The notes under the pieces: model-generated
What the model saw: only the letters and a program-made list of their open reading frames with translations
Database searches by the model: none
Told to the model about the DNA's origin: nothing
Made by a program: the position numbers and the translations under genes
Part shown: positions 53,443 through 55,025 of the stretch, piece after piece
Layout of the letters: each line of letters starts with the position of its first letter
Position numbering within the stretch: position 1 is the stretch's first letter
Assembly: GCA_001179505.1 (NCBI GenBank)
Contig: CDMY01000275.1
Coordinates: forward strand, 62,001 to 126,000
Source of the DNA: Vitrella brassicaformis CCMP3155
Taxonomy: Eukaryota > Protista > Chromerida
DNA length: 64,000 bases
Reading direction: 5' to 3'

Positions 53443-54803
53443 TCATACGGTGGTGAGGACGCCGACCTGGGCCCCGTTAATCATGCTGGTCTCCATCTTC
53501 TCCCGCAGGGCCAGGACGCTCTCGCGCTGGTCCTCAGGGATGGAGTCTGAGGAGAGATCAAAAAGGCCCCCGGTTGGTGTGCGCGCGGCTTGTCGTGTGT
53601 GTGTTGTCTCTTACCGATATCGACAGTCAGCGGGTCGAGCAGAGGCGTGGGGACGGTGCCGTCCTCTGCGGGCTCCTCCCACACGTCGGGCACGAACGCG
53701 GGGCCAGACACATCCACAAACGCAGGCGGGTCATACTGACACACACACACACACACACATACACACACACATACATACACATGCAGGCACGCACACAGCG
53801 GTGTTCATTCATCGATCCATCCATTGATCCATAACCCATACATACGAGTTGACTGACTCACCTCTGCCATGAGCTTGATGTTCTCAAGGAACCTGTCAAA
53901 ACAGGGTGCAGCGTAGGCGGTGAAGTCTGCAGCCTCCATGCGCTTCTGAAGCACCACAGCGCAGCACATGACAGACAACATAACATACATGATCTCTCAG
54001 TCCATCCGTCCGCCAATCGATGACCCCTGCCTGACCTCGAAATAGTCCCTCAGGTATCTGACGCCTGAAGAAAGCGCTGCGAAATCCATGCCAACCTCCT
54101 GAGTGCATAGCATAAATCAATCAATGTCAACCACGTCAGAACGAATGGATGGATCGCATCGATGGCCTGCACCACTGGCTCAGCCGTTCCTTCCTTCCGC
54201 TCATTCCTCTGCTTAGCTTACGTCATAGAGCTCGGTCATGTAGTCGAGCACCTCCCGCCGCATGCAGTGGACAATCCCCGCCGCAATGCCGTACTGCAGC
54301 ACCCGCAGGAAGGTCCCCAGGTCCTCAGAAATCATCTGACCCACACCGCCGTCGTCCCGCGCGAGCCCATACGAGTCCACCACATGCTTCCTGGCCTCCT
54401 CGAGCGCAGCGTCCCTCTCGTCAAAGATGACCTGGGCCGCCTGCTCCCCCGGCAGCAGACCCTTGTTGGTCTCCAGCTCGAGGGGATACACATACCGCTG
54501 ACTCGAGTCAGCGCCGCGCAACAGGTAGATGATGTTGCCAAAGCGCAGCTCTGCGTCGTCGAAGAGGCACTTCTGGCCTCGCAGGAAGCCCTTGAGTGCG
54601 GCGCCGTCGGGGCTGCTGTTGGCATTCATCCGCAGACCGTGGGATCTGGGGTGAGCGGATGCAGGCCGATAGAGCAGAGGCGGTGATGATGACCGGAGAG
54701 CGAAGGCTGACAGGGGAGAGGGCAGCAACGCCAGGGAGAGCAACAAGACAACCATGGAGGCAGCGAGAAACCGCCTTGCAGGGCAGATCTGAAGAGAGCT
54801 CAT
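53443..54803 (-). CDS. Allophycocyanin-alpha-like (ApcA/ApcD-like) phycobiliprotein homologue with bipartite plastid presequence; 5 exons, about 317 aa
   Basis: Exons 54803-54222, 54098-54036, 53945-53862, 53735-53615 and 53546-53443 total 954 nt in frame. ADSSQRYVYPLELETNK and EDLGTFLRVLQYGIAAG…TELYDEVG…SGVRYLR…AAPCFD match the recalled APC-alpha pattern. Presequence MVVLLLSLALLPSPLSA|FALRSSS. Confidence 0.8.
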
Positions 54804-55025
54804 CTTCCCTGCACAAGCACAAGCTCCCGCCTGGCTCTTTGTCAGCTTCTTCCCTCCTGAATCTCGTCAAGTCTAAGCTCGCAAATGTGCAACAGCTCGC
54901 CCAAACAGCAAAATCTGTTTGCAGCATAAGATGACCCAACGCGAGGCCGTCAAGACAGCAAGAAGCAGCGGGCGTGAGTCAGGCAGACAGTAGAAAGATC
55001 CGGCGAGCTGCAGTAGAAGGGCAAG

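What the first reader, a model, noticed from the sequence alone, without database searches (positions are those of the whole stretch)
53443..54340. The phycobiliprotein-like protein lost the canonical C-x-R-D bilin site but has two other Cys and an acidic C-terminal extension
Seen: the position of A-T-C-L-R-D reads Q-M-I-S-E-D, so the Cys and Arg are gone and the Asp is kept. Cys residues appear at IVHC (about 54265) and APCFD (about 53902). About 70 extra acidic/Pro-rich residues follow the globin-like fold. Established: ApcE attaches its bilin through a relocated Cys, and some far-red APC subunits bind bilin non-covalently. Inference: an apo-scaffold, a non-covalent tetrapyrrole binder, or a relocated attachment site.
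Basis: partly seen in the sequence, partly recalled or inferred. Interest (0 to 1): 0.7.

Follow-up and report, generated by a model that had tools for sequence, protein, structure and literature searches.

The report
Phycobiliprotein relic kept in parasite plastids
This Vitrella gene encodes a plastid-targeted protein with the fold of a cyanobacterial light-harvesting pigment protein but without its pigment-attachment site, and the same family survives in the non-photosynthetic plastids of parasites such as Toxoplasma, so its conserved job is very unlikely to be light harvesting.

Summary
The window is Vitrella brassicaformis nuclear DNA. A five-exon gene on the minus strand (54803..53443), with four GT..AG introns (three seen as explicit splice joints in transcript contigs, the fourth implied by them), encodes a signal-plus-transit-peptide protein with a phycobiliprotein fold (PF00502 E 7e-13; AF2 pLDDT 90.6).

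- **Lost site:** C-x-R-D reads I-S-E-D. Cys and Arg are gone and Asp is kept.
- **Not a decayed allophycocyanin:** an exhaustive profile search found about 50 relatives.
  - Group A is chromerids plus plastid-bearing apicomplexans: Selenidium, Siedleckia, Rhytidocystis, Cardiosporidium, Eimeria, Cyclospora, Toxoplasma TGME49_222270.
  - Group B holds red algae (Rhodosorus, Erythrolobus), an ochrophyte (Phaeothamnion) and many unnamed members.
  - Neither has the canonical Cys (0/16 and 1/30) or Arg (0/46).
  - The nearest prokaryotic relatives are 193-aa AplA-like cyanobacterial proteins that keep C-W-R-D.
the IVHC Cys is unique to Vitrella, where relatives have Phe/Tyr. The APCFD Cys is shared (22/30 group B, 5/17 group A) but missing in Chromera and coccidia.
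- **C-terminal extension:** it is acidic, is encoded by exons 4 and 5, carries a conserved motif and is predicted to be ordered.
- **Toxoplasma ortholog:** it is apicoplast-localised by hyperLOPIT. Coccidia have no identifiable heme oxygenase.

The conserved role is therefore probably bilin-independent. A ligand could not be tested here. The scan noted this same stretch once before.

The parts
54222..54803 (-). Exon 1. ATG at 54803 (the annotated start is the in-frame ATG at 54755). Encodes the signal peptide, the transit peptide, the extra N-terminal helix, and helices X to F of the phycobiliprotein fold.
   Evidence: ORF. Transcript contigs reach 54833, and 54803 is the first ATG in them. 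Donor GT at 54221-54220. PF00502 hit.
54036..54098 (-). Exon 2 (21 codons, helix G).
   Evidence: Translation. Splice joints 54097/54221 and 53945/54036 in three runs.
53862..53945 (-). Exon 3 (28 codons, helix H with Cys214).
   Evidence: Translation. Joint.
53615..53735 (-). Exon 4 (40 codons plus 1 base). First half of the C-terminal extension, with the conserved W-E...P-x-T-x-P-L-L-D motif at 53681-53616.
   Evidence: pLDDT 70-95 in the model.
53443..53546 (-). Exon 5. Terminal helix of the extension and the TGA stop at 53445-53443.
   Evidence: Joint 53546/53615.
54621..54803 (-). Bipartite plastid-targeting presequence: a hydrophobic signal peptide ending ...PLSA|F, then a Ser/Pro/Arg-rich transit peptide with no acidic residues.
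   Evidence: Read from the sequence. The Phe after the predicted cleavage site matches the known motif of red-derived complex plastids (established knowledge). All full-length group A orthologs have similar presequences.
54555..54584 (-). N-terminal motif L-R-G-Q-K-C-L-F-D-D in an extra helix that the canonical phycobiliproteins sampled here lack. It contains Cys63. Vitrella has Gln where relatives have a near-invariant His.
   Evidence: Arg 17/17 in group A and 29/30 in group B; His 16/17 and 28/30; Cys 10/17 in group A only.
54321..54332 (-). The former C-x-R-D bilin site, here I-S-E-D.
54264..54266 (-). Cys164 (IVHC), a Vitrella-specific replacement of a conserved Phe/Tyr.
   Evidence: group A is F11 Y2 C1 V1 I1; group B is F22 Y8.
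53901..53903 (-). Cys214 (APCFD), at the position of the Tyr in the canonical helix-H 'YFD'. Shared by most of group B and a third of group A.
53736..53861 (-). Intron 3, holding a (GT)n/(CA)n microsatellite at about 53740-53800.
   Evidence: Skipped as a repeat.

Best explanation
The gene encodes the chromerid member of a conserved family of nuclear-encoded, plastid-targeted proteins with the phycobiliprotein fold. The family stands apart from the light-harvesting alpha and beta subunits. It is closest to the 193-aa AplA-like 'orphan' phycobiliproteins of cyanobacteria.

The clade that holds red algae, an ochrophyte, chromerids and apicomplexans lost the thioether Cys84 and the propionate-binding Arg86. 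It also shortened the B-E loop and reshaped the X-Y hairpin. It gained a conserved R-x-H-K motif on an extra N-terminal helix. In the chromerid/apicomplexan branch it also gained a roughly 75-residue acidic C-terminal extension with a conserved motif, which is predicted to lie in a fixed, extended conformation.

The protein is kept and expressed in apicoplasts of non-photosynthetic parasites that have no identifiable heme oxygenase. Its conserved function is therefore neither light harvesting nor dependent on a covalently bound bilin.

Shown: the gene, its splicing and expression, the fold, the loss of the site, the family and its distribution, and the apicoplast location of the Toxoplasma ortholog.

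Inferred: the protein most likely works as a chromophore-free globin-fold module in the plastid stroma, with a protein-binding or regulatory role in which the extension packs on the globin domain.
For: Identity and fold: PF00502 E 7.4e-13. Profile against PDB allophycocyanin alpha E 1.6e-18. AF2 pLDDT 90.6. VIA Z 12-13 to ApcE, APC and PE. Best Atlas match is a 193-aa cyanobacterial cluster, TM 0.80, rmsd 2.2 A over residues 6-182, which includes the extra N-helix.

Family: the exhaustive search gave only 52 hits and no canonical antenna subunit. Taxa. hhalign of group A against group B gives 99.9%. The careful tree supports group A at 100/100, canonical PBPs at 100/99, and A+B against the rest at 100/98.

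Site loss across the clade: Cys84 in 0/16 group A and 1/30 group B; Arg86 in 0/46; position 86 is Glu in 8/16 group A.

Expression: spliced transcript contigs in three runs. Toxoplasma TGME49_222270 was detected with 11/6/4 peptides and assigned to the apicoplast with probability 1; dN/dS 0.27, CRISPR score -0.76 (PMC7670262 supplements).

No bilin source in coccidia: the only identifiable HO homologs in Apicomplexa are in hematozoans, and those are inactive (PMC11634067).

Extension: the motif is conserved across group A. pLDDT is 70-95 in Vitrella and 64-74 in Toxoplasma.
Against: Asp87, the residue that holds the bilin pyrrole nitrogens in canonical phycobiliproteins, is kept as Asp or Glu in all of group A and as Asp in 26/30 of group B. 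This hints at a retained ligand site.

BBAG-2 proteins and photocobilins lack C-x-R-D yet bind biliverdin (PMC10151467). The model resembles a photocobilin globin domain at Z 11.5.

Vitrella itself has several heme oxygenase homologs, so a bilin is probably available there.

The helix-H Cys is conserved in 22/30 of group B.

No coordinates were available, so I could not check whether the pocket is open, collapsed or filled by the extension. No interaction partner is known.
Confidence: 0.5

Rival explanations
1. Non-covalent tetrapyrrole binder. The pocket still holds a ligand without a thioether bond, as in BBAG-2 proteins, photocobilins and Cys-less far-red allophycocyanin paralogs. The ligand would be biliverdin or another bilin in phototrophs, and possibly heme or a heme-pathway intermediate in apicoplasts. 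The protein would act as a sensor, carrier or buffer.
For: The acidic residue at position 87 is kept in all of group A and Asp in 26/30 of group B. Photocobilin similarity is Z 11.5 and covers the N-helix. Rockwell et al. 2023 showed that C-x-R-D-less globins of this superfamily bind biliverdin. Chromerids express several HO homologs. From established knowledge, not tested here: part of heme synthesis takes place in the apicoplast.
Against: Arg86 is lost everywhere and is usually Glu in group A, which would repel a propionate in the canonical pose. Asp87 swaps freely with Glu in group A (E10, D6). A 5-6 residue deletion shortens the B-E loop that covers the bilin in canonical proteins. Coccidia have no identifiable HO. 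The Toxoplasma gene is nearly dispensable in culture (score -0.76).
Confidence: 0.27
2. Relocated covalent attachment. In Vitrella and in group B members such as the red algae, a bilin is bound through the helix-H Cys (Cys214, 'CFD'), which arose in the same clade that lost Cys84. Lineages that lost bilin synthesis later let this Cys drift.
For: Cys at this column in 22/30 of group B and 5/17 of group A, against Tyr in 9/10 canonical and AplA-like sequences. Its gain coincides with the loss of Cys84 on the A+B branch. ApcE is a precedent for a relocated Cys (established knowledge).
Against: The Cys is absent in photosynthetic Chromera, where it is Ala. It is present in some non-photosynthetic parasites (Selenidium, Cardiosporidium). 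It therefore does not track phototrophy. Its column otherwise holds small residues (A/S/G), as expected for a packing position. It lies mid-helix H, next to the buried, conserved Phe. Helix H is not part of the canonical residue-84 pocket as I recall the structures, and this could not be measured. By the VIA ranges, the ApcE Cys appears to map near the F'-G junction and not here (approximate).
Confidence: 0.15
3. A Vitrella-specific redox pair. Cys63 and Cys164 sit close together and form a disulfide or thiol switch peculiar to Vitrella. This sits on top of whatever the family does.
For: DSSP marks an isolated bridge between model residues 20 and 120 (Phe65 and Met165). The same bridge appears in the Toxoplasma model. 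This puts Cys63 and Cys164 on neighbouring strands. Vitrella alone changed both partners of this contact: His61 to Gln and Phe164 to Cys.
Against: It rests on predicted models only and no distance could be read. It is a single-species feature, so there is no comparative support.
Confidence: 0.15
4. A functionless relic or mis-annotated pseudogene.
For: The Toxoplasma CRISPR score is only -0.76.
Against: The gene is spliced and expressed in Vitrella. Peptides were detected in Toxoplasma, with dN/dS 0.27. Intact orthologs with conserved motifs occur in at least 15 genera that span the chromerid/apicomplexan split.
Confidence: 0.03

Closest known systems
AplA-like 'orphan' phycobiliproteins of cyanobacteria (about 193 aa; AplA of Fremyella diplosiphon, Montgomery et al. 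2004, as cited in PMC2246261)
   Same: They share an extra N-terminal helix before helix X. The best structural match is TM 0.80 and rmsd 2.2 A over residues 6-182. They are the first prokaryotic hits of the family profile. They are not part of the canonical alpha/beta clade. By the literature they are not built into phycobilisomes.
   Different: The cyanobacterial proteins keep C-W-R-D (3/3) and Tyr in 'YFD'. They lack the R-x-H-K motif and the C-terminal extension. They lie in phycobilisome rod or phycoerythrin gene regions, next to pebAB, HEAT-repeat lyases and a pentapeptide protein. That the proteins sampled here are true AplA orthologs rests on size and gene context. The AplA paper was not available.
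Allophycocyanin alpha subunit (ApcA/ApcD)
   Same: It is the best sequence match among solved structures (E 1.6e-18 with the profile). It has the same helices, and the conserved Asp-13, Arg-93, Tyr-97 and 'F-D' positions.
   Different: The NCBIfam ApcA score is 26 bits against a cut-off of 270. The protein falls outside the canonical clade (100/99). It has no Cys84 or Arg86, a shorter B-E loop and Y helix, an extra N-helix and a C-terminal extension. It is nuclear-encoded with a bipartite presequence.
ApcE phycobiliprotein domain (relocated Cys) and Cys-less far-red paralogs (non-covalent bilin)
   Same: Highest VIA Z scores (13.1; 4xxi at rmsd 2.1 A over 114 residues). These are precedents for a pocket that works without Cys84.
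   Different: From established knowledge, not tested here: those proteins keep Arg86 and Asp87 and are phycobilisome parts. By the aligned ranges, the ApcE Cys appears to map near the F'-G junction, where this family has no Cys (approximate).
BBAG-2 proteins, photoglobins and photocobilins (C-x-R-D-less bilin-binding globins; PMC10151467)
   Same: Same superfamily, no C-x-R-D motif, not antenna proteins. VIA Z 11.5 to photocobilin 8j2w, with the N-terminal helix included.
   Different: Those are bacterial and are fused to, or clustered with, B12-binding domains, HO and pre-PcyA genes. No such partners are known here. No BBAG sequence was in my tree, so the relationship is untested.
PfHO, the heme-oxygenase pseudoenzyme of the Plasmodium apicoplast (PMC11634067)
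   Same: Another protein of bilin or photosynthetic ancestry that is retained and repurposed in an apicoplast after losing its catalytic or ligand residue. Chromerids have both proteins.
   Different: It is an unrelated fold. The distributions look complementary: HO-like proteins occur only in hematozoans, while this family was found in coccidia, gregarine-like lineages and nephromycids and was not detected in hematozoans.

Membership tests
Phycobiliprotein superfamily (Pfam PF00502, phycobiliprotein-type globin fold) | Sequence match above the curated Pfam threshold over the whole domain | tested here: met
   49.2 bits against a cut-off of 22.2, profile positions 5-152 of 155.
Phycobiliprotein superfamily (Pfam PF00502, phycobiliprotein-type globin fold) | Globin-like helices A-H preceded by an X-Y hairpin | tested here: met
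   AF2 pLDDT 90.6. Foldseek and VIA top hits are all phycobiliproteins (Z 12-13). smURFP matches at rmsd 2.8 A. The Y helix is shortened.
Phycobiliprotein superfamily (Pfam PF00502, phycobiliprotein-type globin fold) | Thioether Cys84 within C-x-R-D | tested here: not met
   I-S-E-D in Vitrella. 0/16 in group A and 1/30 in group B have the Cys; 0/46 have the Arg.
Phycobiliprotein superfamily (Pfam PF00502, phycobiliprotein-type globin fold) | A bound bilin chromophore | not testable with these tools
   This needs expression and spectroscopy.
Allophycocyanin alpha (NCBIfam NF058521 equivalog) | Score above the equivalog cut-off and placement inside the canonical alpha clade | tested here: not met
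   26.3 bits against 270. The canonical alpha and beta subunits form a 100/99 clade that excludes this protein.
AplA-like cyanobacterial orphan phycobiliproteins | A domain of about 190 aa with an extra N-terminal helix, outside the alpha/beta clade | tested here: met
   Atlas TM 0.80 over residues 6-182 to a 193-aa cyanobacterial cluster. The N-terminal regions align. Tree.
AplA-like cyanobacterial orphan phycobiliproteins | A conserved C-W-R-D chromophore site | tested here: not met
AplA-like cyanobacterial orphan phycobiliproteins | Specific sister relationship to group A+B | tested here: inconclusive
   The tree is unrooted. The node joining the AplA-like and Ceuk groups against the canonical proteins has 40/13 support. 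The link rests on hit order and the shared N-helix.
ApcE-type relocated attachment | A Cys near the F'-G junction that reaches ring A from the other face | tested here: not met
   There is no Cys in 'L-Y-D-E-V-G-M-D'. The mapping is by VIA ranges only and is approximate.
BBAG / photoglobin clade | Genomic association with HO, FDBR, V4R or B12-binding genes | not testable with these tools
   This is a eukaryotic nuclear gene. Its window neighbours are unrelated. No BBAG sequences were available for a tree.
Proteins targeted to red-derived complex plastids | A signal peptide followed by a transit peptide with Phe at +1 of the cleavage site | tested here: met
   ...PLSA|FALRSS..., then a Ser/Pro/Arg-rich stretch with no acidic residues. 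This was read by eye and no predictor was run. The Toxoplasma ortholog is experimentally apicoplast-localised.

The most novel reading that the evidence does not exclude
A phycobiliprotein-derived globin acts in plastids of the red lineage, including the apicoplasts of Toxoplasma, Eimeria and gregarine-like parasites, as a sensor or carrier of a tetrapyrrole. The ligand would be a bilin in algae and heme or a heme-pathway intermediate in parasites. The protein would link the tetrapyrrole status of the organelle to a partner bound through the conserved C-terminal extension. That would be a new, non-antenna, ligand-dependent function for the phycobiliprotein fold in eukaryotes.
Probability: 0.15. 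Interest if true: 0.85.

Novelty: new variant of a known kind. Interest (0 to 1): 0.7.

Why it matters
Phycobiliproteins are textbook antenna proteins of cyanobacteria, red algae, glaucophytes and cryptophytes. This is a separate branch of the fold. It is nuclear-encoded, lacks the chromophore site, and is retained from red algae through chromerids into the non-photosynthetic apicoplast.

The Toxoplasma, Neospora, Besnoitia and Cystoisospora orthologs are annotated as hypothetical proteins and have no Pfam match at all. The Vitrella and Chromera sequences are what reveal their ancestry.

No paper in the searchable library mentions such a protein in chromerids or Apicomplexa. That library is incomplete.

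If the result holds, three things follow:
- It adds a second photosynthesis- or bilin-related relic to apicoplast biology, beside the heme-oxygenase pseudoenzyme of Plasmodium, with an apparently complementary distribution.
- It gives a tractable genetic system for asking what non-antenna AplA-like phycobiliproteins do.
- It offers a natural experiment on what a phycobiliprotein fold does without its bilin.

Tried and rejected
- **Measuring Cys-to-pocket distances, the pocket volume and where the extension docks.** This was not possible. Structure prediction returns only pLDDT and secondary structure, and no coordinates appear in /data.
- **Reading the AplA paper (PMC523187) and the algal FDBR review (PMC5603387).** Neither is held. 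The AplA identity of the cyanobacterial relatives therefore rests on size and gene context, and on PMC2246261.
- **Checking whether Vitrella has bilin reductases.** No eukaryotic genome collection can be searched and I had no referenced FDBR query. I used only the statement on HO homologs in PMC11634067 and unverified scan notes.
- **A degraded ApcA.** Rejected on the tree and the NCBIfam score.
- **P0045 (1591 aa, 8 matched stretches).** It is a repetitive bacterial adhesin-like protein and a false positive.
- **Organisms behind several group B and Ceuk proteins.** Only run accessions were returned.
- **Absence from hematozoans.** It rests on no hit at E <= 1e-3 in the exhaustive search. Very divergent, AT-rich orthologs could be missed.
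- **Procedural note on the joined exons.** No joined exon sequence was handed to any search or fold tool. Searches used exon references or the identical database protein P0001. I did this only to confirm that they translate to P0001 and to map residues to window coordinates.
- Read laying was given 1651 letters.
Full report
**What is there**

The window is nuclear DNA of Vitrella brassicaformis CCMP3155. The product of the first exon is 100% identical to an NCBI protein of that organism (P0001, 301 aa).

The gene lies on the minus strand in five exons: 54803-54222, 54098-54036, 53945-53862, 53735-53615 and 53546-53443. All four introns are GT..AG. Intron-less transcript contigs from three public runs, in at least two studies, match these exons. 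Three introns show as explicit CT..AC joints. Intron 3 lies in a microsatellite that the tool skipped, and its removal is implied by the contigs' record coordinates. The contigs reach 54833 at the 5' end.

The first AUG in those contigs is 54803. That is 16 codons upstream of the annotated start and in frame, so the protein is probably 317 aa.

The N-terminus is a hydrophobic signal peptide ending ...PLSA|F. A Ser/Pro/Arg-rich stretch without acidic residues follows. This is the bipartite presequence expected for a red-derived complex plastid.

**Checking the observation**

The full protein matches Pfam PF00502 at E 7.4e-13 and 49.2 bits, against a cut-off of 22.2, over positions 5-152 of 155.

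- Cys214 (APCFD) is at 53903-53901, also as stated.
- The 75 residues after helix H have 16 acidic, 3 basic and 9 Pro residues (pI 4.05). All but Glu227 are encoded by exons 4 and 5.

**The family**

A profile built from the Vitrella and Chromera proteins was scored against 1.84 billion representatives. It found only 52 proteins at E <= 1e-3, and none was a canonical antenna subunit. One hit, P0045, is a repetitive bacterial protein and a false positive.

*Group A* (E 1e-51 to 1e-15) all carry signal-plus-transit presequences where full length. Members by source name:
- Chromerids and relatives: Chromera velia, Piridium sociabile.
- Gregarine-like and related lineages: Selenidium pygospionis, Siedleckia nematoides, Rhytidocystis, Lankesteria, Cardiosporidium cionae.
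- Coccidia: Cyclospora, Eimeria, Cystoisospora, Neospora, Besnoitia, Hammondia and Toxoplasma gondii (TGME49_222270).

*Group B* (170-250 aa, simple transit peptides) includes the red algae Rhodosorus and Erythrolobus and the ochrophyte Phaeothamnion. hhalign of group A against group B gives 99.9% probability.

*A third set* keeps C-W-R-D. It has three eukaryotic proteins of unknown organism ('Ceuk') and a cyanobacterial protein of about 193 aa, which is present in at least 459 species-level genomes. That gene sits in phycobilisome rod or phycoerythrin regions:
- directly after pebA-pebB in a Rippkaea plasmid;
- between HEAT-repeat lyase genes, a pentapeptide-repeat protein and rod linkers in Aliinostoc.

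This fits the description of aplA in PMC2246261.

**Where the family branches**

The careful tree gives these supports (ultrafast bootstrap / SH-aLRT):

| Split | Support |
|---|---|
| Group A | 100/100 |
| Canonical alpha + beta subunits | 100/99 |
| A+B against everything else | 100/98 |
| AplA-like | 99/98 |

The tree is unrooted and the canonical sample is small (7 sequences). It shows that the Vitrella protein is not nested in allophycocyanin or any antenna class. It does not fix the sister group.

Three things point to the AplA-like proteins as nearest kin:
- They are the first prokaryotic hits of the family profile.
- They share an N-terminal helix that the seven canonical subunits in the alignment lack.
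- The Atlas shape search matches a 193-aa cyanobacterial cluster at TM 0.80 and rmsd 2.2 A over residues 6-182. Full-length allophycocyanin gives TM 0.66 and rmsd 9 A.

**Structure**

The AF2 model of residues 46-301 has pLDDT 90.6 and pTM 0.76. Its elements are:
- an extra N-helix;
- helix X, a short Y helix and the globin helices;
- a confidently placed extended segment (pLDDT 70-95);
- a terminal helix.

VIA-align gives Z 12-13 to ApcE, APC and PE, Z 11.5 to a photocobilin globin domain, and lower scores to heme globins and RsbR.

The Toxoplasma ortholog has no Pfam hit even at E <= 1. It models at pLDDT 89 with the same helices, and its top 50 structural matches are all phycobiliproteins. 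Its extension is less confident (pLDDT 64-74). Both models were built from alignments that contain phycobiliprotein-like sequences, so they are not independent of the sequence evidence.

**Residue census (58 sequences)**

| Position (Vitrella residue) | Group A | Group B | AplA-like + Ceuk | Canonical |
|---|---|---|---|---|
| 84 (Ile142) | L10 I4 F1 V1; Cys 0/16 | V9 F8 L7 I4 M1 C1; Cys 1/30 | Cys 6/6 | Cys 7/7 |
| 86 (Glu144) | E8 F4 L2 Q1 V1; Arg 0/16 | H12 Y8 V3 F3 N2 A1 S1; Arg 0/30 | Arg 6/6 | Arg 7/7 |
| 87 (Asp145) | E10 D6 | D26 N4 | Asp 6/6 | Asp 7/7 |
| Cys164 column | F11 Y2 C1 V1 I1 | F22 Y8 | F3 V2 Y1 | P4 I2 V1 |
| Cys214 column | C5 A5 S4 G1 V1 M1 | C22 A4 V2 F1 Y1 | AplA Y3; Ceuk A2 G1 | Y6 L1 |
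| Cys63 column | C10 S4 P2 N1 | S29 K1 | gap 5, P1 | gap 6, S1 |

- **Cys164:** only Vitrella has Cys here.
- **Cys214:** this is the Tyr of the canonical helix-H 'YFD'. Cys is present in Vitrella, Selenidium, Cardiosporidium and two unnamed group A members. It is absent in Chromera, Piridium, Rhytidocystis, Siedleckia and all coccidia.
- **R-x-H-K motif before Cys63:** Arg is in 17/17 of group A and 29/30 of group B. His is in 16/17 and 28/30. Vitrella is the group A exception, with Gln.
- **Deletions:** groups A and B have a 5-6 residue deletion before helix E and about 4 residues fewer in the Y-A region than the AplA-like and canonical proteins.
- **Possible Cys63-Cys164 contact:** DSSP marks an isolated bridge between Phe65 and Met165, and the equivalent bridge appears in the Toxoplasma model. 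The N-terminal motif is therefore predicted to pair with the E-F loop, which would bring Cys63 and Cys164 near each other. This is inference only.

**The extension**

It is absent from group B and from the AplA-like proteins. Across group A it keeps the motif W/F-E-x-x-x-[DE]-P-x-[TS]-x-x-P-L-L-V-D, and often a following P-E-x-x-R helix.

**Functional context from the literature**

In the Toxoplasma hyperLOPIT atlas (PMC7670262, supplements), TGME49_222270 is 'hypothetical protein':
- assigned to the apicoplast with probability 1;
- seen with 11/6/4 peptides in three experiments;
- CRISPR score -0.76 and dN/dS 0.27.

Blackwell et al. (PMC11634067) state that the only identifiable heme oxygenase homologs in Apicomplexa are in hematozoans and have lost the His ligand. 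Vitrella and Chromera express several HO homologs.

Rockwell et al. (PMC10151467) showed that bacterial globins of this superfamily without C-x-R-D (BBAG-2) still bind biliverdin.

No held paper mentions TGME49_222270 in its main text, or a phycobiliprotein-like protein in chromerids or Apicomplexa.

**Interpretation**

*Shown:* a real, spliced, expressed gene for a plastid-targeted phycobiliprotein-fold protein. It belongs to a clade that lost Cys84 and Arg86 long ago. The clade is conserved in non-photosynthetic plastids, and its Toxoplasma member is in the apicoplast.

*Inferred:* the conserved function is not light harvesting and does not need a covalently bound bilin.
- Coccidia have no identifiable enzyme to make one.
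- A Glu commonly replaces the propionate-binding Arg.
- The loop that covers the bilin is shortened.

I put the chromophore-free protein-binding or regulatory module reading at about 0.5. A non-covalent tetrapyrrole binder gets about 0.27, because the acidic residue at position 87 is kept and BBAG-2 and photocobilins are precedents. Covalent attachment at Cys214 in Vitrella and in group B members such as the red algae gets about 0.15. That Cys arose in the same clade that lost Cys84, but it does not track phototrophy.

The IVHC Cys is not a candidate family site. With Cys63 it may form a Vitrella-specific thiol pair.

**Limits**

- No coordinates, so there is no pocket geometry.
- No BBAG or authentic AplA sequences in the tree.
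- Absence from hematozoans means 'not detected'.
- Bilin reductases of Vitrella were not searched.
- The scan's own notes mention this same stretch (s1-221624), a plastid HO pseudoenzyme, and an RCCR-like reductase elsewhere in the genome. I used these as leads only and did not test them.
- It was used only to check identity with P0001 and to map residues.

Noticed in passing
window 54755-54833: Transcript contigs extend to 54833. The first ATG in them is 54803, in frame and 16 codons upstream of the annotated start (54755). The longer N-terminus gives a better signal peptide, with a basic n-region.
   Followed up: partly
P0066 (Toxoplasma TGME49_222270), P0091 (Neospora), P0092 (Besnoitia), P0016 (Cystoisospora): The sarcocystid orthologs have no Pfam domain on record. 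P0066 gives no PF00502 hit even at E <= 1. Their phycobiliprotein ancestry shows only through the chromerid sequences or by structure.
   Followed up: yes
P0031, P0050, P0052; L084:3001-3672: Eukaryotic, apparently nuclear AplA-like proteins with transit-peptide-like N-termini that still keep C-W-R-D. One lies beside a cyclin gene. The organisms are unknown, as only run accessions were returned.
   Followed up: partly
L081:3386-5585 (Rippkaea orientalis plasmid pP880102): The AplA-like gene lies directly downstream of pebA and pebB and near cpeBA, a pentapeptide-repeat protein and lyase genes. It looks like a compact, plasmid-borne phycoerythrin module flanked by transposases.
   Followed up: no
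window 53740-53800: A (GT)n/(CA)n microsatellite fills most of intron 3. Read tools skip it as a repeat.
   Followed up: no
Family-wide distribution (against PMC11634067): The distributions look complementary. This phycobiliprotein-like family was found in coccidia, gregarine-like lineages and nephromycids but not detected in hematozoans. HO-like pseudoenzymes are reported only in hematozoans. Chromerids have both.
   Followed up: partly
P0001 residues 61 and 164 (window 54575-54573 and 54266-54264): Vitrella alone changed both the near-invariant His of R-x-H-K (to Gln) and the conserved Phe/Tyr (to Cys). The models place these in neighbouring segments, so this may be a correlated change.
   Followed up: partly
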